Assembly: GCF_000143415.4 (NCBI RefSeq)
Contig: NW_003314264.1
Span: forward strand, 1,380,733-1,444,732
DNA: 64,000 nucleotides
Source of the DNA: Selaginella moellendorffii
Taxonomy: Eukaryota; Plantae; Lycopodiophyta
Reading direction: 5' to 3'
Both the position numbers and the translations under genes were made by a program. Of this stretch, positions 13,860-44,998 are shown in pieces. Position 1 is the first letter of the stretch. Each line of letters begins with the position of its first letter. The notes beneath the pieces were generated by a model. That model was not told where the DNA came from and ran no database searches. It worked only from the letters and a program-made list of their open reading frames with translations.

Positions 13860-16800
13860 TCATGGATGATGGTGGCTGCTGCTGCTGCTTCCTTTCCCCC
13901 GGAAGAACCGGCTGAATGCCGACGAGGGGGGCTTCTCCGAGGGCGATCCCATGTCCAAAGACTTGGTGAGATCCAGCTCTTTGCTTGCCGACGCCGCTGC
14001 CGCTGCTGCTTTCAGTATCTTGGACTTGGCCGGGGACGTCGACTTGGAGCGTGGTCTTCCTTCCAGGGGGATGCTAGGCACGAACACCTTGCTTTCACCG
14101 TTTTGTTCGCTACCTTCGGTTGCGAGCTCTGGAGTCGGTTCCGCCGGTTTGGCAGCCAAAGTTTCCGCTTCGTCTGGTTTGAGTTTGGTGTTGTTGGTGC
14201 TTTCTTCCGATGTTGAAGGTTCTTCTGCTGCTGCTGCTGGAGATTGAGAGCTCCTCGACATGCTGAGAGACTGTAGTTGCTCCCCGAGGTTGAGGATAGC
14301 ACGGTGGCACTCGTCCAGTTTCGCCGCGAAATCCACACTCTGCAAAAAGATCGTAATAAGATTTAAAGAGGGAGGGATCACAGTTTTACCTTTTCGGTGC
14401 TCGAGTCTGGAGTAGGCACGACAGGGCTCGAGTTCTTCGTCCTGGAAGAGAAGATTGCGCGTCAGAAAAACAAGGTTTTAATCTGATTTTCTTACCGGGA
14501 GAGTTGCTGCTGAAGAAGATCATCAAGTTCGGCAGCAGCGGCTCGGCTCTTCGACCGTTCCTTCCCAAGCTCCTCCTCTAAAGCTTTTGATCTCTCCTCG
14601 AGTTGACTTGCTGCATGCAATGCTGCTTTCACTTCGTACTGAAGCTCCGCTTTTGCTGAAAAGCTTTCGGCAAGCTGGTCTTCTGCGAGCTGCCTCGATT
14701 TTGCTGACAGAGCTAGCTCCGCCCTGAGCGATGCCACCAATTCTTCAGCTTCAAACACCTGACTCTTCCACGTTACTTGCGACAATGCCAAGTCGTGTTC
14801 CAGTTCCGCCTTGTCAGCCTCCAGAGTCTGGAAGTCCTGAGTGACCTGCTTCAAGCTTTCATTAGCACGTCGCTGGATTTCTTCTTTCTCTGCTTTCAGT
14901 TCTTTCAGTTCTTGCTCCGCTATGGAAAGTCTGCTGCATTCTTCCTTGACACCCTGAACGATCTCGTTTGTTGCGGCCAGAACGTGTTCAAGGTCCATTT
15001 TCTCGTTTTCCAGTCTGCTACATTCTGCTTCCAAACGTTTGAGGTTGTCGGTGGCGGTTTGCAGTTTCTGCTCAACATCCTCGTTTGATCTTTGCAACGC
15101 AAGCACTTCCGTTTCCAGCTTCGAGCAGCTCTCCTTGAACTCCTCTACAATCCTTGTCAAGCCTTCCACCTCAACGCAAAGTCGTTCTTTCTCGGTACTG
15201 ACTTCTCTAAGCTCCTTGTCAGACCGATTGAAGTCACCTTTAACACGCTCAACGTCGTGCATAAAACCATCTTGAATATCTGCGTGCTCGGCTTTCAATC
15301 TCTTGCCCTCCTCCTCTAACGTAGCTATCCTCGTTCTCAGTTGCTGTACGTTCTGTGAAAAGCTCTGCTCCATTTCTTCTTTCTCGATCTTCAGCTGGTA
15401 AAACTCGCTCTGTAAGCTGATAAAACTCGCTTCCTGTGCCTTGAGCTCCTCGTTACTTTGGCAGAGCCTACCTTCCAGCCTAACATTCTGAAGCTCTAAT
15501 CGACCAATATCTTCCTGTAATGTACTCACTCGGCCCCGCTCCATCTTAAGCTGCTCACTGGCCTTCTGCTCCAATAAAGTCCTCTCATCCTTGTGCTTCT
15601 CGAGGCAAAGGTCCATTTCGATACACCGTGCTTCCTTCTCACTGAGAGACCTGTGAAGAGCTTCCTCCCGTAAAAGATACTTGTTGAGAGCTAGCTTGGT
15701 CTCCTCGAGCGACTTTCTACTTTCTTGTTCTTGCTCCATCAAGCGCCTGAGATCTTCCTCCAGTCCGTCAATGGTCTGAAGATGGACGTTCGTTTTGTTT
15801 GAATCCTCATGCCTCTGCTGTGAAGCCTCAGCCAAAGCTTCCTCTAGGTCCTGTTTCTCGTGTTGAAGCTGAACGAAGTCCGCCATCAACTTCTGGATAT
15901 CCTGGTTCACTGCGTCGATGTCTTTTTGAGTTGCTAGCTTGTCCTGTCTGCCGCGTTTCAAATCAGTCTCCAACACTTCAATTCTCATAAGCTGAGACTT
16001 CGCCTGCTCGTCGAGCTTTTCCCTCTGAGCTTCCAGTTCTGCCATGACCCCGTTCATCGTCTGGAGGCTCCTCTCAGCTGTCTCCTTTGCACAAATCTCT
16101 CTGCCAAGGCTCTCTTCGAACTTCTTGCTTAGTTCTTGTACCTGATCACGAGCTTTCACGTCTGCAGCCTTCAGATCATTTTCCAGAACAGATATCCTCG
16201 ACTTAAGCTGTTCGACCAAGACCGTTGATGCCGCCAGCTTTTCTTCCATCTCGCGATTTTGCAAGGTAAGATCGTCCAAAACACTAGCATTCTTGCCAGC
16301 ACTGTCGTGTAGCGAATCCATTAGCACCACCTTCTCAATTTTCAGGGCAGCAAGGTTCTCTTGATGACGAGCCAATTCCTCTCGCAGCAATACTATCTGG
16401 CTGTTTGCCGCTGCTAACGCAGCCTCCATATGCAATTCCGGGCTTCGGTCCCGTTCCAGGCCAGCGAGTACGTCCAAAGTGTTGCAAACTTCGGCGATGA
16501 AACTGAAGAAGTCGGCATTTCCTTGCAATAGAGCGTTGCCAGAAGCAGCCAGCCTTTCAAAACTACCATCGACGTCGGCATTTGTCCATTGCACCTCGAG
16601 AGTTATCTCATCTGTTTTGATCTCGGAGTCAGAAGGTGGCTTCTGCCCGTGCTCAAGCCCACCATCCTGTCCTAAACGCTCTAAACTCCGGAAAATCTTC
16701 CGAGCTAATGGAACCAGTTCCTTCTTTTGCTCGTTTGCTAGCTGATCAACATCTCCATACCTGGATGGTACCCCATCCACCTGTCCCTGTGCATGGCCAT

Positions 16801-18365
16801 TTGCTGCGGTGTTGTTGTGAACCTGACTTTCCAGAGCGGACACTTTCTTTCTTAAAGCGATAATAACTTCGTTGGCGGCATCAAGGTCCTTTTGACTCGG
16901 GCTCCCGCTTTCCTTCCTCTCCAGTGCCTGACCATTTTCGTGTGGCACATTTGACGTGAGCTTCTCCATCTCCAGAAAGTCATCCATGAGTTCGAAGCTT
17001 GTGGTGTCGAGCAGCTTGTCAGGTTTCTTATCTTCTTTCTTAAACTGCGCCAGCTCGGTGATCAGTGCTGAGGCCCAGGCGTCCGCTTCGTCTCCATTGC
17101 AACTTCCATGGGATGCCTGCTGGTTGTCTCCAAAACTTCTCAAAGCCTCTATGTGCCCGTTCAGACCCATCTTGGAGACGTCTTGTTCCCCATAGATACT
17201 TGCGAGTTGCTCTTCCACGTTGAGCAGCTTGCCTGCAGTCCGCGCACACATTATTCTTGCCGCCTGGAGCTCTTTGTTCCGCTTGGCAAGTTCATCCTTC
17301 AGTGATTTGGTTTCTTCTTCCAACGCAAACCTGTCGTCCATATCCTTGTTGCTCATTTCAGAGCAGTCGTCCACCGTTTCAGAGAAAGCTCGTGGTGAGC
17401 TCACCAGCCTTCCAAGTGACTTTCTCCGATCCAGCACGTCCACCTCACGTAGGTGCGGGGACGAACCAGCAGTCTTCTTGCGCAGCTGAATCTTTAGTCT
17501 CTGGCAGTCAGCTTCAAGCTTTGAAACCTTTCGCGACGAATCCAAGAGTTGCTGTTTCGCCGCCTCAGACGCCTTCTTGGATTCATTGTTGAGGCCAACG
17601 AGGTCCTTCTTCAGCGCACGTACGTCATGTTTGAGCGCGGCATTTTCCTTCTCGAGACTCTCCACCTTAGTTGACACCTTCTTCACGTCCAAATCCGCCT
17701 GAACCTTCGCATCGGCTAGACGCTGCTCCAGGGATGCATTCTCGGCTGTTGCTTGGAGCACCTGCTCTTCCGCTTCCGTCAGCCTCGCGTCAAGATCCGT
17801 GCGAACCCGATCCCACTCTTTAGTCTTCTCCTCCAACTCTTCTTGCTTCTGCTCCTGCTCTTCTCGTCCAGTCCGCAGCTGCTTTACACACTCCTTGAGA
17901 GCACCATCCAAGTGAGCAACGCGCTCATCTAGAGCTAGCCTTTGTTGCTGTGCGTTTTCTAGCTGCTGCTTCAACATGGCGGCCTCGGCTTCTGCCTTCT
18001 CCCATCCTGAAGAACAAAAGAGTATCGCAAACTTTCATATCAGCTTCAATGAAGGATTGGAGCATACCTGATATCGCATCCTCGGCAACTTTGGCATGCT
18101 GCTTCACTAAGTTGTCCTTGTTTATAATCTCTTTGAGCGCAACTGTGAGCTTGCTGGTTAGGAGCTGGACGCTTTCATCGCCTTGGTCCTTCTCCATAGC
18201 CGGTGTGTTCTTTCCTAGATCTCCAGTAGCATCACCATTTGGCTCTTTGGCAATGTGGTCGCCATTTTGCGACATGATCAGCTCCTAGAGGAGAAGATCG
18301 CTCAGCCTGTGACAAAGACCAAATAACCCGGAACTACTTACTGGGATATCTACTGCCTCGCTCAT
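13860..18365 (-). CDS. Filament-like plant protein (FPP, DUF869) long coiled-coil protein
   Basis: KDNLVKQHAKVAEDAISGWEKAEAE, LDERVAHLDGALKECVKQLR, WASALITELAQFK, LMDDFLEMEKL, KLDECHRAILNLGEQLQSL; one ~3.5-kb coiled-coil exon. Confidence 0.9.
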
Positions 18366-21798: not shown

Positions 21799-23618
21799 AT
21801 GACGACCATGGATTCATCGTCTCTCACCTGGGAGCTCACAGGGAAGCGATGGATGCGTGTAGGGTTCTTCACGGCGGCTGTCACATTTGCGGTGTGGATT
21901 CTCTGGGAGATCGCTCTGCCGCAAGCGTCCTGGGGTTCCTTGATCGCCGCCGCCTTCAGGTTCTTGCTCTTTCAGCTAGCGCAGCTCGTCTTCTTGCTAG
22001 GGCAGCGATTGGTAGTCCAGCCGGAGGACCCTAACTCGTCCTCCATCGCCGACACGCTGCTGGGAATGGTATTGCTGGGCAAGGCGGTATTGGGCTGGCC
22101 GCTAGACCCAGATTACACGTATCTCGTCGTCCAGAGGATCCGGGTTTTGAGAAACAGTTTTGTTCTCGCTATCGCAACCATGGTCTCTGGATTCCTGTCG
22201 CTATGCGCACTCACGCTCTCAGTGAAATCGAAGAGCTCGTTCTTCATCGACATGGGTGTTCGTGGTGCCGCGCTGGGGCTGTGCTACATTTGTCTCTACA
22301 CTTGGGGGAAGGGCCATTTGCTCAAGTTTCCGATCATCCAGGTACGAGGGAAAAACACTTGTTTTTGATACTTCTTTCGCTCACAAACTCTTTTTCGTGT
22401 TGTTTTTGTGTTCTCAGAGACAAGTTTACTTCAGTATGAAACTGGGGATGACTTTGGCATTGCGCTCGGCACTTAGAATGGCAGTGCTCTCCATCCCAGT
22501 CGCGGAGGTCCTCGTAAGATCCTTGCACCGATGTCTTGCTGGTAACTGGGGGCCCTTCTCTTTGTGGCACCAAGTCATCTATGTTGTCGGAGCGTTCTTT
22601 GTCGCTCTGATCTGGAACTTGTGCTGCCACTTTATCCAGGTATGCATGACGCGAGTCTTTTTGTGATCCGTTTTGTTGATATGTGTGTTTGTGATTCTTC
22701 AGGTGATTCACACGAGACGGTTCGTGTTTGCGCCACCCCCGGGATCAGCTGCAGCCGAGACTAATCCGACAGAGCCGCTTCTTTCGGTTTTGGAAGACGA
22801 CGAGGACTTGATCAGGCAGTACCTTGGATTCCTGGACCTGTTCATCCTATCAGGAGTCTCCGAGATAAATGTTGAGGCCTGGCGGCGAGCGGCATTCTTC
22901 GAAGAAAGCGGTGAAGCTTACAAGAAGGTCATCACGCTCTGTCTGCGACCACTTGACAGGCTTACAGTGAGGCTCCTGAAGGGTCTGGAAAGTGCGCAAG
23001 TAGGTGGTACCAAAGATCACATACCGGGAGCTGAACAAGGTGTGCATGCCAAGGAAAACTTTCAAGAATTGCAAGTAAGTAGCATGTTTTTTCAGACTGA
23101 ATAGTACTCATCAGCTCCATGCTTGGCAGCTTTGCTCGTGGTGTGCGGGCATTGTGTCTTCGCTGACGGCATTCTCACGCACCGAAGACCGATATGGCGT
23201 TGCGCAGCTTACTGGCTCCAATGCGGCGGTACTGGCATCGCTCATATCCTGTCTGCTTATCCTGGACGTCTACCTGGGACGTCGTAGTGGTTTTGGAGCT
23301 TTGAGCCTCGTCAGCCCGAACGGGATCCGGTGGGCCGTGCCGTTCCGAGGAGCTCTGCTGGACGCGGATAGGAAGCAAAGCGCTCTTTTCAAGAAGAAGT
23401 CTCTCCAGCACAGGAAAGCACACGTAATGGCGGATGTTCTTCGGACAGCAATCTACAGGATCGTGGCAGTTTTCAGGGACGAGATGGTAGTGACTGGCTC
23501 TGGCTCCGTCTCGTATGCTCTCGCGGAACGAGACTGGCTGAGTAGGAACAAGCCTCTCTTTGGGACACCCGAGATGCACCTCCAGAAGCTGGGACAGTTT
23601 ATAGAGTTCCAGGAGTAG
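21799..23618 (+). CDS. NDC1: Transmembrane nucleoporin NDC1 homolog
   Basis: N-terminal TM helices; [63 protein letters not shown] as recalled for plant NDC1; 4 exons. Confidence 0.85.
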
Positions 23619-23747
23619 GATGGAAGAAGACACAGTTTTGACGGGATTTAGTAATGGTGCGGTTTAGATGTATCAACAGGGTTGTGAGGAGAGCTTCCTC
23701 GACTTGTTAGAAGGTTTGTCTTTCTTATTTCTTTCTACACTTGTGTT

Positions 23748-24478
23748 TTATGCGCTGATCGGAGCTCTTGGTGGTGCAGCTGAGTCGGGATCACTCGTTT
23801 GATAGCTATAAGGTGGCGCTTCGCTTTGGAGCTGCATCACCGACGTCATGACTTGCGCGAGCTCCGCCTGCGTGTGGTTGAGCTCCAGCATATGGGACAG
23901 GACAGAGTTGAAGGACTGGAGCGTCTCCTGGACGCTCTGGAGCGTGCTGAGGTTGTCCTTGCTGCCGGACTGGGACTGGATCGCCTCGAGACCCTCCACC
24001 AGGGACAGTGCCTCGATCACTTGGAGCTGAGTCTGATTGAGATCGGGGAAGGACAGGGATTCTCGGATGCTCTGGAGCTGCTGCTGGGTCTCCTGGATGG
24101 CTTCACGCAGGTCAATGAGCATATCTCTAGTGAGGACGCCAGTGTTGTCACCACTCCCCGAAGGTTGATCACCACTGCTGCCACTTCCGCCGCCGCCGTT
24201 GTCACCACCACCACCACTACCGCCACCTCCTCCACCTCCTCCTCCGCCAGGTCCGCCACCAGCGCCAGGACCATTTGGACCTCTCGGGTCCGTCACATTG
24301 GAAGAAGAAGATCCACGAGAGCCACCTGGAAACAAAAGCAAGCACCAGATCGAGTTGGAAAGGTAAAGATCGAGCTCTCACTTTCGGTGGTATTTTCGCC
24401 AAGACAACTTCTCCAGTGGATGGAATGGAGCAGCAGTAACACCAGCAGCAGTAGCTGGAAATTCGAAGCCGGGATCAT
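23748..24478 (-). CDS. Secreted Gly/Pro-rich helical protein, family member 1 (unknown function)
   Basis: Signal peptide MIPASNFQLLLLVLLLLHSIHW; 56-nt phase-1 intron 24326-24381; DPRGPNGPG plus poly-Gly tract; Leu/Gln/Ser helical domain. Confidence 0.8.
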
Positions 24479-24707
24479 CCTGGGAAATTGGCAGTAGCAG
24501 GCATGAGACTAGAAGTGGGCGAAAGTTTCATCCATATATAAGACTGATCGAGGAAGCGTGTCTTTCTCGATCCAAATTTTGTGGAACATGTCCTTTGGGT
24601 TGTCTTGCCAGTACTGAGTGCCTTTCTCGTGAAAGCACACACTTCTTTCTAAAGTCAAACTCGTCAAACTATAGTCAACTTAAGTCAAATCGTATAAGAA
24701 ATCTACT

Positions 24708-25385
24708 CTAGATTCCTAGGGGCGGCGCCGCTCTTGGCGAGGAGGCTCGATCCGGGTCGCGGGCCTGGAAGCTAGCGGGCGGTGTATCGCTCTGGAGCTC
24801 GATGATCGAGGCCATGACCTGGGCGAGATCTTCCTGCGTCTGGTTGAGCCCCAGCATCAGGGAGAGGACATTGTTGAAGTACTCGAGAGTCTCCTGGATG
24901 GCCTTGAGCGTGCTCAAGCTGTTCTTGCTGCTTGCCTGGAGATCCTCAAGCCCCTCCACCAGCGACAGCGCCTCCACGACCTGGAGCTGGGTGGCATTCA
25001 AGGTCGGGAAGGAGAGCGACTGCCGGATGCTCTGGAGCTGCTCCTGGGCCTCCCCGATCGCGTCGCGGAGATCGATGAGCATGTCCATGTTGAGGATCCC
25101 GTTCTCGTCACCTGATGGTTGATCACCACCACCACCACCGGCACCCCCACCTCCCGGTTGACCGCCGCCGCCGCCAGGACCATTCGGACCTCCCGGGCCT
25201 CTTGGATCAGTCATGTTGGAGGAACCACCTACGAAGAACCCAAGAAATAGATGTGACCAAGGAAATGTATGGTGGTTTTTACCATTCTGGGTGGTGGAGT
25301 TTGTGCTGCTACTAGCGTTTCCCGAGTGGATCCAGTGGGCGAGCAGCAGTAGCAGGAGACTGGACGTCCAAATCTTGAGAATCAT
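24708..25385 (-). CDS. Secreted Gly/Pro-rich helical protein, family member 2 (tandem paralog of member 1)
   Basis: Signal peptide MILKIWTSSLLLLLLAHW; in-frame 54-nt phase-1 intron ~25229-25282; DPRGPGGPNGPGGGG; DMLIDLRDAI...EALSLVEGLE almost identical to member 1. Confidence 0.8.
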   Translation of the reverse strand: MILKIWTSSLLLLLLAHWIHSGNASSSTNSTTQNGKNHHTFPWSHLFLGFFVGGSSNMTDPRGPGGPNGPGGGGGQPGGGGAGGGGGDQPSGDENGILNMDMLIDLRDAIGEAQEQLQSIRQSLSFPTLNATQLQVVEALSLVEGLEDLQASSKNSLSTLKAIQETLEYFNNVLSLMLGLNQTQEDLAQVMASIIELQSDTPPASFQARDPDRASSPRAAPPLGI

Positions 25386-25656
25386 CGTGGCGAAATGCTT
25401 GAGCGAATGTGTTTGAGGGCGCGAGTTTCTTATACCGGGGAATGGATGCAATCATAGAGCATGTCCTTTGGGTTGCCAAGCTAATCACTGGATCATTGAT
25501 CCACATAGAACGTCTCCGTGAATCCCAGCGAATATACTCCATGTAGCCCTATTTTTGACCAAGTTTGAATAGCAGAATATACTCCATAAACCTTAATTTG
25601 ACTATGTTTGACTTAATGAATATTCGAAGGATATAGGTTTTGGGTTTGTGTCGGCT

Positions 25657-27530
25657 ATGGCGGTGGTGGGAGCGCTGTTGCTCGTGGCGGCGGCGGTCTT
25701 GTTCCTGGCGCGGCGCTGGGAGTGCAAGCGGGCGATCGCATTCTTCCATCCCTACACCAACGATGGGGGCGGCGGTGAGCGCGTCCTGTGGTGCGCCGTC
25801 CGGGCCGTCCAGGAGATGTTTCCCGATGTCCCTTGCGCGATCTACACCGGGGATGAGGCTACGCCCTCGTCACTGGCAGCTCGAGCATGGGAGAAATTCG
25901 GTGTCAAGCTCCATTCGCCTCCTCAGGTAAAATTCTCTCTAGTTCTTCTTAGTTGTTGTTAGCTCGGTAAAATTCTTCTAGTTCTTCTAGTTCTTCGTTT
26001 CTTCTTGATATTCTTCGATCTCATGCCTGGATCTTCTAGTCCATTCGTGAGTCTAGATGAGTAAGCATTCACTTTGTCACGAACGAAGTTTGCGTGACGA
26101 TAAGCATGCCTGGAACTTTTAGCTCTGATCGATCGTGATTCTTTCTACAGGTTGTGAGACTGCGAACCAGGAATCTGATTGATCCATCGAACTATCCACA
26201 CTTCACACTTCTCTGCCAGTCTTTGGGCTCCATAGTTCTTGGATTGGAAGCACTCGTGAGGCTCAGGCCAGTTTTGTTCTTCGACACAAGCGGCTATGCC
26301 TTAACTTATCCCCTCGCAAGACTGTTTGGCTGCAAGGTGGCGTGCTACACTCACTACCCGACCATCAGCTCCGACATGGTGTCGCGAGTTTCCAATCGCT
26401 CGTCGCTCTACAACAACAGTGGAGTTATCGCGCGCAGGCAAGTTTCGTGTCGAACGTTTGCGTGTTTCTTTTCGTAGTGACTTCGTGCGTTTTCCAGCTT
26501 TTTGTTATCAACTGGGAAGATTGTTTACTACGAATTGATGGCCTTGATGTATGGACTAGCAGGGAGATGTGCCAATCTGGCGATGGTGAACTCGTCCTGG
26601 ACACTATCCCACATAGAGAAGTTGTGGAAGGGAGCACGGATTGTGCGAGTTTATCCTCCGTGTAACACCGAGTCATTGCAGGTATGGAAGAGATCTTCTT
26701 ACGTTTTCCTCTACTTGATAGAGGCATCCATCTTTTCTTCAGGAACTTCCGCTAGAGAGGAGCGAGCGTGAGCTTTATTTCATATCGGTCGCCCAGTTCC
26801 GTCCAGAGAAGGTAAATCCTCCCTTCTCTTCTGGTGCATCCCTTCTGGTGCATCCCCTGACGCTTTCGTTTTCTCGAAGAACCACGACCTTCAAGTGGAA
26901 GCTTTCGCTATGGCCCTCGAGAAACTTAGTGCTGAGAAACGTCCCAGGCTCAAGCTTGTGGGAAGCTGCCGAAATGAAGAGGACGCGAAGAGGCTGTCGG
27001 ATCTCAAGTCTCTGTGCGCCAAGCTTGGAATCCAAGATCACGTGGACTTCCATGAGAATATATCTTACACGTAAGTCTTTTTTGGAGAAGTTTGCTCGCG
27101 ACGCTCATCAGTTGTCTCTCCAGCGCGTTGCGAGACTTGCTTGGAGGGGCCATAGCAGGCATCCACTTCATGATCGACGAGCACTTCGGGATCAGCGTTG
27201 TGGAATACATGGCAGCAGGAGCGATCCCAATCGGTAAGTTGTAAACGTTTTGCGGTTCCTGAGCAGGAGTTTTTGAGTTCTCGGCAATTTGCAGCACACA
27301 ACTCCGCCGGTCCAAGGATGGATATTGTGGTGGACGAAGATGGCGACCAGAAAACCGGTTTCCTCGCAGCAACAGTCCCGGAGCTCGCGAGCAAAATGGT
27401 CGAAGTGCTCTCCATGGCAAGCTCAGAGCGCCTGGAAATCGCCAAGGCTGCTCGGAGGCGATGCCACAGGTTTTCCGAGAGGCAATTTAACGACAGCTTC
27501 AAGCAAGCCATGACGATGTTCCATCTCTAG
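25657..27530 (+). CDS. ALG11: GDP-Man:Man3GlcNAc2-PP-Dol alpha-1,2-mannosyltransferase ALG11
   Basis: [60 protein letters not shown]; includes a GC-AG intron 26438-26497. Confidence 0.95.
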
Positions 27531-27636
27531 AGAAGCTCAGCTTGGCATAGGAGAGGATTGGAAAAACATTGCATTACCAAAACTTACGAACGAAAAAAAG
27601 GAAAACTTAACAAGAGGTACCTCTTGTGTTCCTGGA

Positions 27637-29320
27637 CTACCTCACTGTTACAATGTCGTCTATCTTGAGGATCATGCGGACGCACTCGGTCGCCAGGCTC
27701 ACGGCGCTTGTGCTCACCAGCAGCGGCTGCACCACATTCTCTTCCAGGATGTTTGTGATCTGCCCCTTCCTCACGTTGATCCCAGTGTTGACCTCTCCAT
27801 TCGCGTGATGATTGCGGAGCTCCGTCACGATGGTGATGGGATTCAGCCCCGCGTTCTCGGCTAGAGTGTACGGGATCACCTCCAGTGCCTCCGCGAAAGC
27901 GCGCACGCAGTAGCTCTCCATCCCCTGTAAAGTTTTGGCCCACGCTCCAAGCTGTCTTGACGCTTCGATCTCTGGAGCTCCACCACCTTGTCATCGAAGA
28001 AACAAGAAACACATTAGCTCTCTGGACATCTATCGCTCGAACGAAAGAAACTACGCTCTTGGAGAAGAAACACTTACCAGCGATGAGGAAACGTTTGTTG
28101 ACAAGGCACCGCACGACACAGAGAGCGTCGTGCAAGCTCCGCTCGGCTTCGTCGAGAACCAGCTGGTTCGATCCACGAACCAAGATGGTAGTCGTCCGGC
28201 CCATGTTTTTGATCCCGGATATCTTGACGATCCTTCCGTCGCCCACCGAGACCTCTTCCACGAGCTCGGCCTGTCCCAGCTTCTCGGCTCGGAAGTGCTC
28301 GATGTTGGCGATGGGAAGACAGTTGAGCGTCTTGGAGATGAACTCGATCTCGTCCCTCTCCACGTCTTTCACCACCAAGATCTTGGCCTTGGCGAGATAA
28401 TGCAGCGACAGCTCCGTCACCGCGTCCCGGAGGATGCTCTTCTGGATGAGAAGAACGTTACACCCGGTGGCCTTGATCTTCTTTATCATTCCCAGGATGT
28501 GGTTCCTCTCCTCCTTGAGAATCCTGTCCATCTGCGTGTAGTCCGAAACTATGACGTTCTGCTCGATATCCGTCTTGGGTGGCGAGATCTGGAACTGGAT
28601 CAAACCGATCTTCGCGTTCTCGACACGAGTCGGCCCACCGGCAGTGTGGCTCGCCTTCTTGTCGAAAACAAGCCCCTTGATCATCTCGGTGTCGTCCACG
28701 GTGCCACCGAGCTTCTTTATCACCTTGATATCTCGCAAGTCCACCGAGTCGGGCCTCGCCGGATCCACGACGTTGAGCACCGCGTCCACGGCCAGCGGCG
28801 CCAGCAGCGACGAGTACTGGCTCACCACCTTGCTGTTGAGCGACGTGCTCGCGTTCTTGACGAGCGCCTCGCGGTCCGAGAGCTCCACCGGTATCGCCAT
28901 GGACGTGAGCACCTCCACCGCCTTGAGTGACGCGCGGTGGAAGGCGTCCGAGATGATGGTCGGGTGGACGCCCTTGCCGAGGAGGGCGATGCACTGCTTG
29001 AGCAAGGCGCCGGCGATCACCACCACGGTGGTGGTTCCATCGCCCGCCACGATATCCTGGCTCTTGGAGAGCTCCACCAGCATTTTGGCGGCGGGCTGGA
29101 GCACCTCCATCTTGAGGAGGATGGTGGCGCCGTCGTTGGTGATGATCACCTCGCCGCTGGAGGTGGAGAGCATCTTGTCCATGCCGCGCGGACCCAGGCT
29201 CGTCCGCACGGCGTCCGCCACGGCCTTGGCGGCCATGATGTTGGCCTGCCGCACGTCATCCTTGCGCTTGTTGTCCACGTACGTCTCTGTCTTACCGGAG
29301 ATCATCGGCGCCTCTGGCAT
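27637..29320 (-). CDS. CCT4: Chaperonin TCP-1 subunit delta (CCT4)
   Basis: [55 protein letters not shown]; one intron ~27987-28077. Confidence 0.96.
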
Positions 29321-29543
29321 TCTCGCGTCGCCGCCCTCGCCCTCGCGCCTAGCTCGCTCTCTTCTTGGAGCTCGAGGCTGCCCTAACCCTAGAACCCCGA
29401 TCGCGATCGCGGCCGTTGATCGGGTGACCGCGGGATGTGCGCGGGATATTCGTGGTTTTACCCGGCAATTTTTAGGGCGCGAGGGGGATTGCGCGAGGAG
29501 GAGCACAGCGCCGCGGCTTTTGAGCGCCGCTGTTTCGATCGGG

Positions 29544-30961
29544 ATGGGAGCCACGGGCTCCAAGCTCGAGAAGGCGCTGGGCGATCAGTTCCCGGAGGGC
29601 GAGCGCTATTTCGGCCTGGAGAATTTCGGCAATACTTGCTACTGCAATAGCGTATTACAGGTAAATCTCTTCCTTGCTCTTCTCTTCGAGTTTTTCCTTC
29701 CCTTTGAGTTCTTCCTCTCTGTTCTTGCGTTGCTACAAAAATCTCTTTTTTGTGTGTGTGTAGGCATTGTACTTTTGCATCCCATTCAGGGACCAGCTGC
29801 TGGATTACTACGGTCGAATCAAGACGGTCGGAGAAGCCGAAGAGAATTTACTGACTTGCTTAGCGGATCTCTTCACACAGGTATCTCGCTCAATCTGTTC
29901 CCAAGGTGATGTTTCAATCCTCCCTTTCCAGATAAACTCTCAAAAGAAGAAGACGGGTGTTATAGCTCCAAAGAGATTCGTGCAGAGGGTAAAGAAGCAG
30001 CACGAGCTCTTCCGGAGCTACATGCACCAGGTATTTTTCCATCCTCTCTGAAATAAGCACTCAAAACGAACAAAGCGCGCGATACTTACAGGACGCACAC
30101 GAGTTTCTAAACTTTTTGCTGAATCAACTAGTTGAAACTCTGGAGAAGGAGGCCAAGTCGGACCCGACAGCCCCAGCATCCCCAGAGAAAAAGTCTAGCG
30201 ATAATGGAGCAACTGGAGAAGAGCATCCGCTTACGTGGGTCCACAAAATCTTCCAGGTTTGCGACTTTGTCAAGCTTTTGGCTCCAGCTTACTCACTCAG
30301 CCATGAATCCACAGGGGTGTCTCACCAACGAGACGAGGTGCCTGCGCTGCGAGACGATAACAGCAAAGGACGAGAAGTTCCTCGATCTCAGCCTCGACAT
30401 CGAGCAGAACAGCTCCGTCACAAGCTGCCTCCGCAACTTCAGCTCCACCGAGACGCTCATCGCCGATGACAAGTTCTTTTGCGACAAATGCTGCAGGTTT
30501 CTACCTCTTCCTTTTCCCCTCGCCGTAACACCCCGCTGCCTCGCAGCTTGCAGGAAGCGCAAAAGCGGATGAAGATCAAGACGCAGCCTCGCATCCTCGC
30601 GCTCCACCTCAAGCGCTTCAAGTACATGGAACAGCTGGGCCGATACAAGAAGCTCTCGTACAGGGTGGTGTTCCCGCTGGAGCTGAAGCTGTGCAACACG
30701 GCCGAGGATGCTCCGGGGTCCGAGTCGGAGTACTCGCTGTTCGCAGTGGTGGTGCACGTAGGGAGCGGCCCCAACCACGGCCACTACGTGAGCCTGGTCA
30801 AGAGCCACAACCACTGGCTGTTCTTCGACGACGAGAACGTAGAGATGATCGACGAGAGTTATGTGCAGACGTTCTTCGGCTCCACGCAGGAGTACTCCAA
30901 CAACACAGACCACGGCTACATCCTCTTCTACGAGTGCCTGGATCCCGCAAAGGCATCGTGA
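29544..30961 (+). CDS. UBP3: Ubiquitin-specific protease UBP3/UBP4 (USP12/46-like)
   Basis: [36 protein letters not shown] (Cys box), [28 protein letters not shown] (His box). Confidence 0.95.
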
Positions 30962-31163
30962 AAATTTTTTTCTCTCGCTTTTCTTCCTTCTTTTTTGGTT
31001 TCAAGATGATGACGATGATGGTATGTCCAAAGCTATTCCATGTTTTTGATCGCTAACAATGCCGAGTACGACCGTTGACTTATTTCGCTTGGGAGACTAA
31101 AATCGAGTTATTTACTTTGACAAGCGTTGTCTTTATGGACTTATTTTCTTTGACGATCGATGA

Positions 31164-31943
31164 CTATGGTCCTCCACCGCCGGTGACCTCGCTCTCGAGC
31201 GTGGCGAGCGTGTTGACCGCGTCTGCGAGCTGCTGCTGGACTTGACTGGCGGCAAGCATGCACGACACTAGTTGACTGCTGCTGTTGAGCGCGCTCTGGA
31301 CGTCTCCCAGGATGGTCAATTGCTGCTGACCGCTGGGTTGACCGCTCTGGCCGCCCGGGCGGCCTCCCGGTCCCCCGGGGCCATTGGGTCCCGGTCCACC
31401 AGGTCCACCGCCCGGGCCACCCGGGCCACCAGGTCCTCCAAGCCCGCCGCCACTGCTGCCATCGCTGCCGCTATCGCTCCCCTCTCGCGCCTCTGGAGCT
31501 TCCGCGATGGAAGATAGGCCGTAAGAGACCGAGGACGTGGGAGGCTTTGCCGAGGAGACGGTGGACGAGTTTGAAGATTTCAGGGTGCTGTAGAGGAGCT
31601 GGTCGACCGTGTTCACTATGGACATGGCGCTGGCCAGCTGGTTTTGGGAGGCCTCGAGCGAGTCCAAGGAGATCGAGGAAGTGGCTTGCTGGAGCTCCAC
31701 CATGGAGGCGTTGATCGCGCTCTGGAGCTCCCCGAGCATGTCCATCTCCTGCTCCTCGGTGCTCTCGCTGGAGACGTTGGAGAGAAGGAATCGGCGAGGC
31801 CCTCCTGTGAGATCATAAAAACGCCACGAATGTTTTTAGACCGTGAGAAACTCTATACCTCCAAGGGATCCATGTCCCGGAATGAGAAGCAGCGCCACTG
31901 CTAGAAGAAGGAGAAGAGCTTTCGCTGTGATCGGCGATGCCAT
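31164..31943 (-). CDS. Secreted Gly/Pro-rich helical protein, family member 3
   Basis: Signal peptide MASPITAKALLLLLAVALLLIPGHG; phase-1 intron ~31807-31859; helical halves alignable to members 1/2 and separated by a (GGP)n tract. Confidence 0.78.
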
Positions 31944-32268
31944 GATACGCATCTCTGTTGTGTTTAGAAGAGTGACACCTCGCGGCTTTAAAGGCCAGAG
32001 TCATCCGGCTTCCAAGGGAGATGACACTAAACACACGCGATGCATGGGCGCTCCCAGCGCTCTCGCTCTCATCATTTGCAACGTAAAGATTTTGGTTCTT
32101 GGGTTTCTTGGGTTGACGTGAATTCACCTTACGTGGCTATACCAAGAATATGCCAGTATCTTTCGCAATTACACGAATCAAGATCATTTATTCTATCATG
32201 GTTTTTCTCATACAAATAAATGTTGGGAGAAGAAGTCGATTGACATGAGAAGGAGTGCTGGCTTGGAT

Positions 32269-32879
32269 CTATGGGCCTCCTCCAGGCCCAAACCCAGGGC
32301 CGCCTCCACCACCATTGTTGTTCAGCTGGAAGTAGGACGCGAGCGTGGAGATCAAGTCCATGGCGGAGCCGAGCTGGGAGGCAGTGGTGTTGAGTGACGA
32401 GAGAGCCAATCCCACGCTCCCATCCTGCGACTGCACGTCGCTGAGGCCGGACAAGACCCCGATGGCGCCGGTCAGCTGCTCGTTGACCGTGGCGTTGAGC
32501 GCCGCCACCGAGTCCAGTGCCTGGTCAACGCTCTTCCGGAGCGAGCCCAGCGCGGAGACGAGCGACAGCGCCTGGTTGACCTGCGTCTCCAGGCTGCTCA
32601 GGCTCGAGAAGCTCGTCACGGCCTGGGTGATTCGCGCCTGGGTGGCGTTGACCGCGCTCTGGACCTGGAGCAGCATCTGGAGCTCTTGGTTTTGGTCCTG
32701 GTTTCCACCGCCGCCGGGTCCGCGAGGGCCGTCTGGATCACCAACTTTTGGGGGAAACCACGAAAGCTTTGAGCAATGCTAGAGACCTAGAGAGGCTTGG
32801 GAGACTTACCGGGTTGCGCGAGCTTGGGAGCCGCGAGAAGCGTCGCGAGGAGGAGGACGAGGCTCATTTCCCTGGCCAT
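32269..32879 (-). CDS. Secreted Gly/Pro-rich helical protein, family member 4
   Basis: Signal peptide MAREMSLVLLLATLLAAPKLAQP; phase-1 intron (gtaagt...aaag); DGPRGPGGGG, QMLLQVQSAVNATQ...QALSLVSAL, C-terminal GGGGPGFGPGGGP. Confidence 0.78.
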
Positions 32880-40499: not shown

Positions 40500-42290
40500 G
40501 TCATCCAAGCCAAGTCATTCAAGAACTTATGAAGACTGTTGATCTTGACAGCCAAAGTTCCAGCCTTCGCTATATGATATGCTCCAACCTCATATTCCGT
40601 GCCAGCTTCTGGCATTTGTTCATCATTACTTTTGTCTTCCCAGAATTCTCACATCAATCACCCTCTTAAGCACATCGTCTCATGCCTTACCTCTCTCAAT
40701 CAAACTATCACCTCCTCCTCTTCCCAGTCTTACCAGCATTCTCCATCTAGAGCCACTCCTTGTGCACTTCACTAAAGATCTCACCGTTTCCTCATCACCC
40801 AGCCAAATTGCAACTTCAACCAGCTCCCTCATGTTGCATCCACACTTCTCAAACGTGCCTGAAAAGAGCTCCAAGAAGAGCCATGTAACCTTCTCATTCT
40901 TCTTCACCCCAAACAGCCCGGCCACTTCATGCTCACCACAGTTTTCTTTAGATTCACCCATCTCACTCTGGTTTTCACATCTCCATGGAACTTCTCTGAT
41001 GAAAGCTCTGATACCATGAAAGCAGAGGATGGGTACATATATATAGAAACTACTGCCACGTCTCGTGATCCACATCAGCACATCTCCGCTACTTATCTCA
41101 ATGCCTCTCCTTGCAAATGCCATGGCAGCGTCATGACACCCTTGAAACTCGAGGTCCACTGCTTTCGAAAGCTTTCTCCTTCCTTCTTTCTGGAGCTTAT
41201 CCAGTTTTTGTAGCTTTCCATCTCTTCCATCTCTTCCCTCTTCATATAGACGGAACTTGAGGCCTCCACGATATCCAAAGCCCTGGTGCTGCTTGGTTGA
41301 TCTTCCTGCTTGTTCCTCCCATGAAGCCTTGCAGACTTCCAGCTTCTTCTCCCAAAACTCTTCCATCCGAGGAACGCTGCTCTCTCCCCACTTCTTCACT
41401 ACCCGGACCAAGCATCTAGCGAGAAAGAGAGACACAGCAGGTGCCATGCTCACAATCTTCAATGCCTCCCTGTCATATCCACACTCGACGAAAAATTCCA
41501 GCAAGCGTGCCAAGAACTCGCCACTCTTGCAAACTTAATCCTCGCCCAGCAGCTTTTCTGCGAAGACCACCGCATCCTGCAAGCCACTCTCTCGCAGGCG
41601 CTCCGCAAAGCTTATAATTCCCGGCTTCTTATCTTTGCTCTCCGAGAGGCCCGGCTCAATCGCTCCGCTGTAGCATTCGTCCCATCCATACTTTTGCACC
41701 TGTTTCCATGAGATCAATCCCCTAATTCCTCATGACCGAGAAGGCCGCGTCACGAAAGTCGTGCTTGACACACCGTCCCACGCGTCACCTCGGACAGCTT
41801 GTGCTCGCAATCGCAGAAGAACACCGTCTGGAAGTAGCCCGTCCTTGAAGCAGCGCCAGAGAAATCAAAAGCCACACTCTTCGCGGATCTCCAGCTCGCC
41901 ACCCTCGTGCCCAAACTGCATCGGGCTGCAAGATCATCGTCCCAAACATGCAATCTTCCTTCTCGGTGTCCCTGTGGAACTTGAAGTGGCCACCATGTTC
42001 GTACAACAGCAGCTTGTACGGTCTCACGTCCAGACCAAGCGCAGCGGCGTCGATCTCCATCTCCTCCATGTGACCAAGTCGAGGACCACCTTGGAGAACA
42101 AGTCTGGGACTTGGGGGCAGCTCACCTTGGACGCTTCGACTTGCCGGCGTCGAGGATGGTTTGATCGCCCTTGCCGAAGGGCGCTGGGGAAGCCAAAAGA
42201 GGGAGGGCAAGATCTCCATGCCCACCTCCGGCATGGCGAATTTGGTTGTGTCCTGTGGCACAATCCTGTGGCCTCGTCAGTTGCTGTGAT
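40500..42290 (-). pseudogene. Pseudogene copy of the 2OG-Fe(II) oxygenase gene with deletions and frameshifts
   Basis: YKLLLYEHGGHFKFHRDTEKEDCMFGTMILQ, FDFSGAASRTGYFQTVFF, KYGWDECYS, EEFWEKKLEV shared with 46068-48728. Confidence 0.9.
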
Positions 42291-42742: not shown

Positions 42743-44998
42743 ATGATGCGAAGCCTGGGAGGTACGGCGGCGGTACTAGATCATCATCCCGGCGATGGGC
42801 TGGAGAATGCGAGGATGGATTTTGGGAAGCACAAGGGCGAGCTCATGGTGGAGCTGCCCGATAGCTACTTGGCTTGGATCTCCCGGCGGCGCAAAGGGCG
42901 ACTGGCGTTGTGGGCGCCGCTGGCGGACAGGGTCTTGCACGAGCGCCACTCTTCGACTTGTTCTTCTTCTCGGCCGCCCGGAGGTAAGGTTCTGGGTTGC
43001 GAGGAGGGCGACGAAGTGGATCCGATCGATGGGTTTAGCCTTGGAGCAGCGGTGGCGCTCTTTGGATGGTGTCCGGAGATCTCCGCTAGCGATGAGACAT
43101 CTCCAGGGAAAGACGATGCAGGAAGAACTTTAGAAAGCGATGGAGGAGATATTTTGGATTCGAATGAAAGAAGAGAAGGGACCGATGGAAACCAAGAGAA
43201 AAAGAAAAGCTCTCTCCACCATGAGTTTAACAAGATTTTTCGGAAGCCTTGGAAGAATGTGGACCAAGGAAGCACTCTCTCCAGGCTTGGCAAGCTTGTG
43301 GTGGAGCTCCAAAGATCCGGGAACTCCACTGCTCGAAGAAAGCCCAGGCAAAAGCTCTACCGGGATCATGATCACGGGAATTCACGAGCGAAGAGGATGG
43401 TCTTTTCTCCGAGCTCCAAGCATCATGGAGACCAAGAACACCATGACAACGCCAAAGCCCTCGATAGATTGGCAGGATTGGTGGCGAGGTTTGATAGCCG
43501 GGGGCACAAATCCAGCGGTTGCTACGCCGATTTCATCCGCTGGTGTGGAGACACCGGAGCCGTGATGGATGGCAAGTTCGTCCACGGCCACCTCGCGAGC
43601 TCCCACCGCAAGAACGAGAAGTTCTTGCTAAACTTGCTGGTGGAGATGTATGGCAAGTGGAGAGACACGCTCCAAGCCCGGGCAGTGTTTGACGCGATCA
43701 AGCGTAAAAACGTTTTCTCGTGGAACACGATGCTGCAAGTCTACGTCCAGAACGATCGTCCCCGCGACGCGATCGAGCTCTTCCGAGCGATGGATTTGGA
43801 AGGCGTGGTGGCGCCAAACAAGCTCACATTCTTTGCTCTAATCGAGGCTTTCTCGGCCATGAGTGATGATCTCGACGATCGCGATCGAGATCGAGAGATC
43901 CAGGGCGATAGAGCTCGAGCCATCCGGGCTCTGGGAGATCGGATCGAGAGCAGTGGGTTTGGATCCGACCCATTCCTCGCGACTGGCCTCGTCAATCTCT
44001 ACGGCAAGAGTGGGTTGGTGGACGAGGCGGTGGGGGCGCTGGATCGAATGCGCAGGGGCGACCGCGACGTGATCGCCTGGACCACCGCGATCGCGGCGCT
44101 GGCAAGGAACCGCGAGTTCCCGGCCGCGATCCACCTCTTCCGGGAGATGGCGCTCGAGGGCGCGCGCGCAAACAATCTCACGCTCCTGGCGGCGCTGGAT
44201 GCTTGCGCAGGGCAGCGGGATCCCCGGAGTGGCGCTGTGATCCACGCCGCGGCCGTGGAGCTGGGATTCCAATCCAATGCCATCGTCGGCACCTCCATCG
44301 CCCACATGTACGCGAAGTGTGGCGATCTCGATCGCGCTAGCGCCGCCTTCGCGGGGATCACCGTCAAGGATTCCGTGGCGTGGAACACGATCATCGCCGC
44401 CCACGTCGAGAATCGCCGGCCCCGCGAAGCCCTCGACCTCTTCGAATCGATGCTCGAGAAGCATTCTTCTTCTTTCTCTTCGAGTTCTTTGAGTTCTTCG
44501 CTAGCGCGGCCCAACGCCGTGACTTTCATGGCGGCGCTGGATGCATGCTCGCTCGCGGAGGCGCCGCTGGGCCATGGGCGATCGATCCACGCGAGGATCC
44601 GCGGGGCGGGCCTGGAATCCAACGTGCTCGTCGCGAATTCGCTTGTGGATATGTACGTGAAATGCGGGAGCCTGGGCGAGGCGAGGGGAGTGTTTGACGC
44701 GATCGAAGCTCCCACTGTGGCGTCCTTCACTGCGATCATCTCCGGCTATGCTTATCAGGGCGACGCGGAGGAGGCGCTGGCGCTCTTCCGCCGGATGCAG
44801 CACGAAGGGATCGTCCCCAATCACGTCACCTTTGTCGTCGTGCTCTTCGTCTGTAGCCACCGGGGACTGATCGAGGAGGGATGGCGGCAGTACGGTTCCA
44901 TGGCCACCGACTATGGGATCGCCCCCACGAAGGAACACTGGGATTGCGTGCTAGATCTCTTTGCTCTTTTGAAAAACAGGGGAGGGAAAAACCCTTAA
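42743..44998 (+). CDS. Chimeric PLS-class PPR protein with an N-terminal FGKHKG (DUF3820/ExoX-C-like) domain; E domain truncated
   Basis: 751-aa intronless ORF; MDFGKHKGELMVELPDSYLAWIS..W..LAD.VL; P-L-S repeats from ~aa 255; ends shortly after PTKEHWDCVLDLF. Confidence 0.85.
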   Translation: MMRSLGGTAAVLDHHPGDGLENARMDFGKHKGELMVELPDSYLAWISRRRKGRLALWAPLADRVLHERHSSTCSSSRPPGGKVLGCEEGDEVDPIDGFSLGAAVALFGWCPEISASDETSPGKDDAGRTLESDGGDILDSNERREGTDGNQEKKKSSLHHEFNKIFRKPWKNVDQGSTLSRLGKLVVELQRSGNSTARRKPRQKLYRDHDHGNSRAKRMVFSPSSKHHGDQEHHDNAKALDRLAGLVARFDSRGHKSSGCYADFIRWCGDTGAVMDGKFVHGHLASSHRKNEKFLLNLLVEMYGKWRDTLQARAVFDAIKRKNVFSWNTMLQVYVQNDRPRDAIELFRAMDLEGVVAPNKLTFFALIEAFSAMSDDLDDRDRDREIQGDRARAIRALGDRIESSGFGSDPFLATGLVNLYGKSGLVDEAVGALDRMRRGDRDVIAWTTAIAALARNREFPAAIHLFREMALEGARANNLTLLAALDACAGQRDPRSGAVIHAAAVELGFQSNAIVGTSIAHMYAKCGDLDRASAAFAGITVKDSVAWNTIIAAHVENRRPREALDLFESMLEKHSSSFSSSSLSSSLARPNAVTFMAALDACSLAEAPLGHGRSIHARIRGAGLESNVLVANSLVDMYVKCGSLGEARGVFDAIEAPTVASFTAIISGYAYQGDAEEALALFRRMQHEGIVPNHVTFVVVLFVCSHRGLIEEGWRQYGSMATDYGIAPTKEHWDCVLDLFALLKNRGGKNP

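What the first reader, a model, noticed from the sequence alone, without database searches (positions are those of the whole stretch)
23748..32879. Four-member family of unrecognised secreted GPGG-rich helical-bundle proteins
Seen: four minus-strand genes in two tandem pairs (23748-25385, 31164-32879) split by housekeeping genes. Each has a signal peptide followed by a single phase-1 intron, a PR dipeptide in a Gly/Pro context near the mature N-terminus (DPRGP, GPRR, GPRGP), GPGG/poly-Gly tracts and a Leu/Gln/Ser/Ala-rich helical region. The helices align across pairs: DMLIDLREAIQETQQQL...QVIEALSLV vs DMLGELQSAINASMVEL...QLASAMSIV vs QMLLQVQSAVNATQARI...QVNQALSLV, and LSTLQSVQETLQSFNSVLSHMLELNHTQAELAQVMTSVMQLQSE vs LTILGDVQSALNSSSQLVSCMLAASQVQQQLADAVNTLATLESE. 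The mature parts are acidic, nearly Cys-free and carry several N-glycosylation sequons. Known: GPGGX is the elastic motif of flagelliform silk; PMEI/invertase-inhibitor bundles need conserved Cys, which are absent here. Inference: a lineage-specific apoplastic structural or self-assembling (or defence) protein system, e.g. in wall, spore coat or mucilage.
Basis: partly seen in the sequence, partly recalled or inferred. Interest (0 to 1): 0.85.

Follow-up and report, generated by a model that had tools for sequence, protein, structure and literature searches.

The report
Spikemoss secreted 17-residue-repeat coiled-coil family
Four neighbouring genes of the spikemoss Selaginella moellendorffii encode related, probably secreted proteins built from an unusual 17-residue helical repeat that carries sugar-attachment sites in register, most likely rods that zip together outside the cell, with no relatives found elsewhere and no tested function.

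Summary
The window is S. moellendorffii scaffold GL377568. All four genes are intact in both haplotypes and show more silent than replacement changes. The introns of A and B are confirmed in RNA-type runs. Both genes are present in two samples of one study and absent from a third. The two pairs are homologous (A/B profile finds C at E 4e-9, D at 2e-4).

New here: the helical part looks like a continuous 17-residue repeat (core positions 0,3,7,10,11,14: two heptads plus a stammer), not a compact bundle. N-glycosylation sequons sit in register, three repeats apart in A, B and D. Best reading: secreted, glycosylated, overwound coiled-coil rods with Gly/Pro spacers that oligomerise into an extracellular matrix or coating. 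Secretion, oligomer state, tissue and function are inferred, not shown. No family, fold or non-Selaginella relative was found, but no other spikemoss appeared in any search. The silk GPGG link is only an analogy. The scan noted this family before on other DNA of this genome (s1-339340, probably the other haplotype).

The parts
23748..24478 (-). Gene A, 224 aa; exon 1 24478-24382 (leader), intron 24381-24326, exon 2 24325-23748. Public model is truncated to 124 aa
   Evidence: (joint CT..AC, 56 nt)
24174..24290 (-). Gene A DPRGP motif and Gly/Pro, poly-Gly spacer
23829..24125 (-). Gene A helical region, about five 17-residue units; in-register sequons at 24038-24030 and 23879-23871
24708..25385 (-). 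Gene B, 207 aa; exon 1 25385-25283, intron 25282-25229, exon 2 25228-24708; allele of SELMODRAFT_414772
25125..25208 (-). Gene B DPRGP motif and Gly/Pro spacer
24795..25085 (-). Gene B helical region; four gapless 17-residue units; sequons 51 residues apart at 24998-24990 and 24845-24837
31164..31943 (-). Gene C, 241 aa, SELMODRAFT_404926; exon 1 31943-31859, intron 31858-31805, exon 2 31804-31164 (splice not checked against RNA here)
31782..31799 (-). Gene C PRRFLL, a candidate SBT6.1/S1P-type RRxL processing site just after the leader (inferred)
   Evidence: motif type from PMC7162652
31581..31742 (-). Gene C N-terminal helical block
31347..31445 (-). Gene C internal GGP/GPGG spacer between its two helical blocks
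31188..31319 (-). Gene C C-terminal helical block, aligns without gaps to the C-terminal units of A and B
32269..32879 (-). Gene D, 181 aa (acceptor 32745) or 177 aa (acceptor 32733); exon 1 32879-32810 (splice not checked against RNA here)
32332..32679 (-). Gene D helical region, six 17/18-residue units; sequons at 32649-32641, 32496-32488 and 32391-32383

Best explanation
A small, organ- or condition-specific family of secreted structural glycoproteins. After the leader is removed (inferred), each chain forms a long amphipathic helix of 17-residue units, consensus h-N-x-T-Q-x-Q-h-x-x-A-h-S-x-h-x-x (shown as a sequence pattern). The 3-4-3-4-3 core spacing equals two heptads plus a three-residue stammer, about 3.4 residues per turn. 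That would give a tightly overwound left-handed coiled coil (inferred). One chain cannot bury that stripe alone, so chains should oligomerise (inferred). A stammer lets only partners with the same register pair, so the family members are each other's likeliest partners (inferred by analogy to MITF). N-glycans at position 1 would coat the rod, and the Gly/Pro tracts would be flexible spacers. C has two helical blocks split by such a spacer and could bridge two rods into a network. The likely product is an acidic, hydrated extracellular matrix, gel or coating in one tissue. I put the coiled-coil architecture at about 65% and the structural-matrix role, given that architecture, at about 60%.
For: Period-17 column similarity z 6.7 in B and 5.8 in D, above every other period tested; the DNA self-match peaks at 51 nt in D and at 51 and 102 nt in B; B and D align without gaps only at offsets -34, -17, 0 and +17. 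Hydrophobic period is 3.40-3.46 in five of eight segments, each only marginal. Nine of ten helical sequons follow L/I/V (shuffle mean 1.3; none of 20,000 shuffles reached 9), and they lie 51 residues apart in B and D and 53 in A. In units without Asn at position 1, position 3 is L/I/V/A in 8 of 12, as a core position would be. AlphaFold gives D one helix over residues 9-100 plus a second one, pTM 0.31. Selection: 13 silent against 8 replacement differences between haplotypes (about 547 silent and 1625 replacement sites); A versus B dN/dS about 0.25. A and B are present in runs X1 and X2 and absent from X8 of the same study. X1 and X2 need extra words from C and/or D (5.0 and 3.3 SE), X8 does not. 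Stammers overwind helices and most non-heptad coiled coils lie above 3.5 (PMC4786415); a stammer can restrict partners (PMC6954422).
Against: Both models are low confidence (mean pLDDT 48 and 63) with almost no alignment depth, and no multimer was modelled. The repeat is interrupted (19-residue steps after the first unit in A, B and C, with a Pro in A and B). Profiles built from two-unit fragments link the pairs only weakly (E 0.03-3.4). No Tyr/Lys/Cys cross-linking motifs are present (0-2 of each). Secretion rests on hydropathy alone. The tissue is unknown. Co-expression of C and D is indirect.
Confidence: 0.4

Rival explanations
1. Each 17-residue unit is a short helix plus a turn at the glycosylated Asn, so the chain folds as a small helical solenoid or bundle (half-TPR-like, or like the fungal hydrophobic-surface protein HsbA). 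It would bind a lipid, cuticle or spore-wall surface, or a partner protein, in the apoplast.
For: Position 1 has the lowest helix propensity and is N or G in 10 of 20 units. Sequons often lie in turns (general knowledge). Lag 34 equals the TPR length, and the only outside hit was a TPR protein. D has a sub-threshold HsbA match, E 0.035. The model of B breaks into three helices.
Against: No conserved Gly or Pro at the putative turn; position 3 is often a large hydrophobe. No Pfam TPR, PPR or PMEI match even at E 1. Profile comparison with the TPR protein gives 18% probability. No compact model (pTM 0.25, 0.31) and no fold match.
Confidence: 0.2
2. Secreted defence or stress proteins: amphipathic helices that act on microbial membranes or inhibit enzymes, induced through WRKY factors.
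For: Young, lineage-restricted, sample-specific secreted family. W-box cores upstream: 4, 3, 1 and 2 in 300 nt against 0.66 expected, and 3, 3, 2 and 2 in the other haplotype.
Against: The proteins are acidic, almost Cys-free and heavily sequon-bearing, unlike typical plant antimicrobial peptides (general knowledge). Selection is purifying, not diversifying. The W-box excess is post hoc: 2-5% of random 300-nt windows hold as many as A or B, and B shares its upstream region with ALG11.
Confidence: 0.15
3. Precursors of signalling peptides, cut by subtilases, with the helical part as a pro-region or carrier.
For: C has RRFL right after its leader, matching the RRxL type cut by SBT6.1. All four have a Pro-Arg in a Gly/Pro context, with Asp-Pro in A, B and possibly D. 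C and D both end in GGGP.
Against: Conservation lies in the long helical repeat, not in a short terminal motif; the tails of A and B have diverged more than their helices. Only C has RRxL.
Confidence: 0.1
4. Vegetative or spore storage glycoproteins routed through the ER to a vacuole or the apoplast as a nitrogen reserve.
For: Gln/Asn/Ser/Leu-rich, sample-specific, with contig depth above the neighbouring housekeeping gene in X1 and X2 (contig depth is a poor measure).
Against: A strict 17-residue core register and in-phase sequons kept under purifying selection are more constraint than storage needs. No cupin or prolamin match.
Confidence: 0.1

Closest known systems
Hymenopteran (honeybee) coiled-coil silk proteins F1-F4
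   Same: Four secreted paralogues of similar architecture; in the bee they form a defined antiparallel heterotetrameric coiled coil (PMC12284834, PMC3032785). A working analogy for hetero-assembly.
   Different: No sequence relationship found. Bee silks use long heptad runs (recalled); these proteins are shorter, use a 17-residue period, carry in-register sequons and have Gly/Pro spacers.
Stammer-containing coiled coils (MITF/TFE, LINE-1 ORF1p, Actinobacillus OMP100 stalk)
   Same: A three-residue insertion into heptads, which overwinds the coil and in MITF restricts partner choice (PMC4786415, PMC6954422).
   Different: Those described have isolated stammers; here one recurs every 17 residues in a secreted plant protein. 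No homology.
Plant invertase/pectin-methylesterase inhibitors (PMEI/INVI)
   Same: Small secreted all-helical apoplastic proteins.
   Different: They need four conserved Cys and a compact four-helix bundle (PMC8990755); here 0-1 Cys, no Pfam match, no compact model.
Plant glycine-rich wall proteins and hydroxyproline-rich glycoproteins (GRP, AGP, extensin)
   Same: Leader peptide, Gly/Pro tracts, probable extracellular role.
   Different: Gly only 13-16%, PAST 31-37%, 1-6 arabinogalactan glycomodules, no Ser-Pro-Pro-Pro; most of each chain is a helical repeat.
Flagelliform spider silk (GPGGX)
   Same: GPGG occurs in all four proteins.
   Different: 1-6 copies in short spacers rather than long tandem arrays; no spidroin domain match.
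TPR / PPR helical repeats and fungal HsbA
   Same: Amphipathic helices with small residues on one stripe; two units span 34 residues.
   Different: No two alternating helix types, no conserved turn Gly or Pro, no significant match.

Membership tests
PMEI/INVI | Four conserved Cys forming two disulfides | tested here: not met
   0-1 Cys per protein; definition from PMC8990755
PMEI/INVI | Pfam profile match and compact four-helix bundle | tested here: not met
   No PMEI hit at E up to 1; models not compact but low confidence; no PDB fold hit
Classical arabinogalactan protein | PAST above about 50% (42% relaxed) with glycomodules throughout | tested here: not met
   PAST 0.31-0.37, 1-6 glycomodules; thresholds from PMC5266747
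Extensin | Ser-Pro(3-4) repeats and Tyr cross-linking motifs | tested here: not met
   No SPPP; 1-2 Tyr
Glycine-rich wall protein | Gly-dominated mature chain (threshold recalled, not looked up) | tested here: not met
   13-16% Gly
Flagelliform spidroin | Long tandem GPGGX arrays and spidroin terminal domains | tested here: not met
   1-6 GPGG; no spidroin Pfam match
TPR/PPR repeat | 34/35-residue two-helix unit matching the family profile | tested here: not met
   No Pfam hit; hhalign to the TPR protein P0035 probability 18%; the period is 17 with one helix type
Coiled-coil protein (structural class) | Periodic 3/4 spacing of core residues | tested here: met
   Core at 0,3,7,10,11,14 of 17; period-17 z 6.7 and 5.8; heptad signal weaker, z 2.6-3.9
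Coiled-coil protein (structural class) | Continuous helix | tested here: inconclusive
   D modelled as one 92-residue helix at pLDDT 63-77, B as three helices at pLDDT about 48
Coiled-coil protein (structural class) | Oligomer with knobs-into-holes packing | not testable with these tools
   No multimer prediction available
Hymenopteran coiled-coil silk | Sequence homology to F1-F4 | tested here: not met
   The profile finds no such protein among 1.84 billion representatives or in the PDB
Hymenopteran coiled-coil silk | Heterotetramer of the four paralogues | not testable with these tools
   Only indirect co-occurrence of transcripts
Secreted protein | Cleavable signal peptide, no membrane or GPI anchor | tested here: inconclusive
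   Hydrophobic leaders and polar C-termini; SignalP not available, cleavage not shown
SBT6.1/S1P substrate | RRxL-type site after the leader | tested here: inconclusive
   Present in C only; cleavage not testable

The most novel reading that the evidence does not exclude
The four proteins co-assemble into an N-glycosylated hetero-oligomeric coiled coil with a regularly repeated stammer (17 residues per 5 turns), cross-linked by C, and form a silk- or gel-like extracellular material in one spikemoss tissue. That would be a plant structural protein class not built on hydroxyproline or disulfides, and a natural example of a periodicity near the lower limit for coiled coils.
Probability: 0.15. Interest if true: 0.8.

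Novelty: new variant of a known kind. Interest (0 to 1): 0.5.

Why it matters
Known plant wall structural proteins are mostly hydroxyproline- or glycine-rich (general knowledge); a secreted coiled-coil family would add a different building principle. For protein structure, most non-heptad coiled coils have periods above 3.5 and stammers are known as isolated strain points (PMC4786415). A short natural protein with a stammer every 17 residues is an easy test of how far a helix can be overwound continuously, and of whether register alone sets partner choice. The limits: the family is so far seen in one species, and its function is untested.

Tried and rejected
Pfam and NCBIfam: nothing near a cut-off. 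Three word-index searches: only S. moellendorffii proteins; the other hits to C were bacterial or unnamed proteins, which I attribute to the GPGG tract (checked for P0004 only). Full HMMER search of 1.84 billion representatives: A, B, C and one cyanobacterial TPR protein (E 4e-5), rejected as generic amphipathic similarity. Gene D itself was not returned, so coverage is incomplete. ESM Atlas by features: no usable hit for B or D. PDB by sequence and fold: nothing significant. Atlas fold search returned only unrelated long-helix proteins. Phage tblastn of D: none. No paper in the library names the gene or protein ids tried. The expression-atlas supplement is cut before these genes, so the tissue could not be read. 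The public name 'putative lysozyme-like protein' for C is rejected: no lysozyme domain or fold, probably transferred through the Gly-rich tract. Artefact or antisense shadow rejected: spliced joints in the minus-strand sense, two intact haplotypes, purifying selection. Promoter motifs (W-box, CAACCCAA, CATGC) were inconclusive. Two-unit profiles did not link the pairs well; the full-region profile did.
Full report
Source and genes. Exon 2 of gene C matches SELMODRAFT_404926 exactly, on scaffold GL377568.1 of Selaginella moellendorffii. The other haplotype, GL377590.1, carries the same block at about 98% identity. On the minus strand the order is D, C, then a ubiquitin hydrolase, CCT4 and ALG11, then B, A, then Ndc1 and Rad51-like genes. 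Each of the four genes has a short first exon encoding a hydrophobic leader, one phase-1 intron of 54-77 nt, and a second exon with the rest. Lengths are 224, 207, 241 and 181 or 177 residues. B, C and D have gene calls. A is called as a 124-residue fragment without its leader in this haplotype and is not called in the other.

They are real genes. All four are open in both haplotypes. Exon 2 shows 13 silent and 8 replacement differences over about 547 and 1625 sites, and the helical regions of A and B give dN 0.20 against dS 0.82. Contigs from RNA-type runs skip exactly the predicted introns of A (runs X1, X2) and B (X1, X2, X3). In X8, from the same study as X1 and X2, B and the first exon of A have no contig while CCT4 and ALG11 do. 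The runs are guessed to be RNA, but their spliced housekeeping joints fit that. So A and B are expressed in some samples and not others; the labels are coded and the tissue is unknown. Indirectly, X1 and X2 hold more of the region's 31-letter words (0.62, 0.57) than A, B and the housekeeping genes can supply (at most 0.54, 0.52), while X8 needs nothing extra. At least one of C and D is therefore probably transcribed in the same samples. This is a rough estimate.

One family. A and B are 65-70% identical. Across pairs, local scores are 79-94 against shuffled maxima of 62-64, reversed sequences at 41-47 and windows of a generic coiled coil at most 65. A profile from A and B alone finds C at E 3.7e-9 and D at 1.6e-4 among 1684 six-frame ORFs, with the next hit at 0.3. 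Together with the shared gene structure and location, this establishes homology, although such scores would not stand out in a database of billions. No fifth member lies in the window or the flanking loci.

What the helices are. Both are made of one smaller unit. Self-similarity peaks at lag 17 in B and D, with lag 34 close behind. Among periods from 7 to 25, period 17 scores z 6.7 in B and 5.8 in D, the heptad only 2.6-2.7. The DNA self-match peaks at 51 nt in D and at 102 and 51 nt in B. B and D align without gaps only at offsets of -34, -17, 0 and +17. Twenty units give the consensus h-N-x-T-Q-x-Q-h-x-x-A-h-S-x-h-x-x, with large hydrophobes at 0, 7, 11 and 14 and small or medium residues at 3 and 10. 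The spacing 3-4-3-4-3 is two heptads plus a three-residue stammer, or 3.4 residues per turn. The first step in A, B and C is 19 residues, so the repeat is imperfect. Nine of the ten sequons in helical parts follow L, I or V (shuffle mean 1.3; none of 20,000 reached 9), eight of them at position 1 of a unit. They lie 51 residues apart in B and D and 53 in A. By geometry a 17/5 coil turns once in about 54 residues, so glycans three units apart would face the same side; that is inference only.

Coil or solenoid. Position 1 has the lowest helix propensity, which fits either a strained stammer or a turn. Two things favour a continuous helix: there is no conserved Gly or Pro at the junction, and in units without the Asn, position 3 is L, I, V or A in 8 of 12 cases. 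AlphaFold models D as one helix over residues 9-100 plus a second helix (mean pLDDT 63, pTM 0.31), and B as three helices at pLDDT 48. Neither is compact, and neither is reliable. Fold searches return only generic long helices or nothing.

Relatives. None outside this species. Pfam, NCBIfam, PDB, the ESM Atlas, three word searches and a full profile search of 1.84 billion representatives gave only A, B, C and a cyanobacterial TPR protein that fails profile comparison. Two cautions apply. D itself was not returned. B's protein is on record from one genome contig only, although RNA contigs hold its whole coding sequence, so plant transcriptome assemblies seem not to be in that collection. 'Selaginella-only' therefore means absent from the annotated proteomes searched; it says nothing of other spikemosses.

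How it most likely works. Shown: genes, splicing of A and B, sample-specific expression, homology, the 17-residue pattern, the in-register sequons. Inferred: the leader sends the chains into the secretory pathway, where they are N-glycosylated. The helices zip into an overwound coiled coil. Stammers cause overwinding, and most non-heptad coils lie above 3.5 residues per turn (PMC4786415), so a regularly repeated stammer is unusual. In MITF a stammer allows pairing only with partners in the same register (PMC6954422), which makes the family members each other's likeliest partners. The Gly/Pro tracts are flexible spacers. C, whose two helical blocks are split by such a spacer, could link two rods. 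The product would be an acidic, sugar-coated extracellular matrix or coating. I give this whole account 0.4. Rivals: a helical solenoid or surface-binding bundle (0.2), defence proteins (0.15), peptide precursors (0.1; C has an RRFL site of the SBT6.1 type), storage proteins (0.1).

Comparison with known systems. It is not a PMEI, AGP, extensin, glycine-rich wall protein, spidroin or TPR protein by the defining features tested. In working principle it most resembles honeybee silk, where four paralogues form a defined heterotetrameric coiled coil (PMC12284834), but there is no homology and no evidence yet for such a complex here. No paper in the library names the ids tried.

Earlier notes. The scan reported a four-gene family of the same description on another piece of this genome (s1-339340). 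That is probably the second haplotype and is not independent support. Its short entry does not mention the 17-residue repeat or the sequon register. A note on an RRFLL site in spikemoss Hog precursors (s1-421927) led me to check the same motif in C.

Limits. Searches used exon 2 by reference or protein ids returned by tools; the joined models were not searched.

Verdict. A real, undescribed, so far single-species family of probably secreted glycoproteins with an unusual 17-residue coiled-coil-type repeat. New variant of a known kind; interest 0.5.

Noticed in passing
window 23600-24261, + strand: The Ndc1-like gene's transcript appears to have a 3' UTR intron (about 23714-23779, GT..AG) and to run antisense over most of gene A's exon 2, also in a run where A itself is off. 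A natural antisense overlap that might regulate A.
   Followed up: partly
window 24479-24707: In run X1 one contig spans B and A including the 229-nt gap (in X2 a contig spans B, the gap and A's exon 1). B's 3' UTR probably overlaps A's start; A has its own TATA-like box near 24540 and more depth than B in X3. A two-gene transcript is not shown.
   Followed up: partly
window 24658-24690 and 25555-25610: Clusters of TTGAC (W-box) cores upstream of A (4) and B (3, opposite orientation); the two stretches resemble each other in inverted orientation. A and B also share a 16-nt upstream element.
   Followed up: partly
window 27297-27984: The 3' ends of ALG11 (+) and CCT4 (-) are joined in single contigs, suggesting overlapping 3' UTRs.
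   Followed up: no
window 23748-24478; L001 10921-11649: Gene A is mis-annotated: truncated to 124 aa in one haplotype and not called in the other, although its spliced leader exon is transcribed.
   Followed up: yes
window 32733-32745: Gene D has two in-frame candidate acceptors 12 nt apart (181 or 177 aa); the public model length fits the upstream AAG. Not checked against RNA.
   Followed up: partly
window 41785-42261 and 46068-48728, - strand: Two related ORFs, one 886 aa and one fragment, that by eye resemble 2OG-Fe(II) oxygenase-like proteins, with further similar pieces near 40680-41513. Not searched.
   Followed up: no
window 59252-61069: An earlier scan note (s1-388291) reports a 1.8-kb insertion in a 26S rDNA copy here.
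   Followed up: no
window 9999-12158, 42743-44998, 51389-52222: Three PPR-type genes or fragments by eye, as expected in this genome; also a long coiled-coil FPP gene at 14492-17977 and retroelement-like ORFs at 62606-63949.
   Followed up: no
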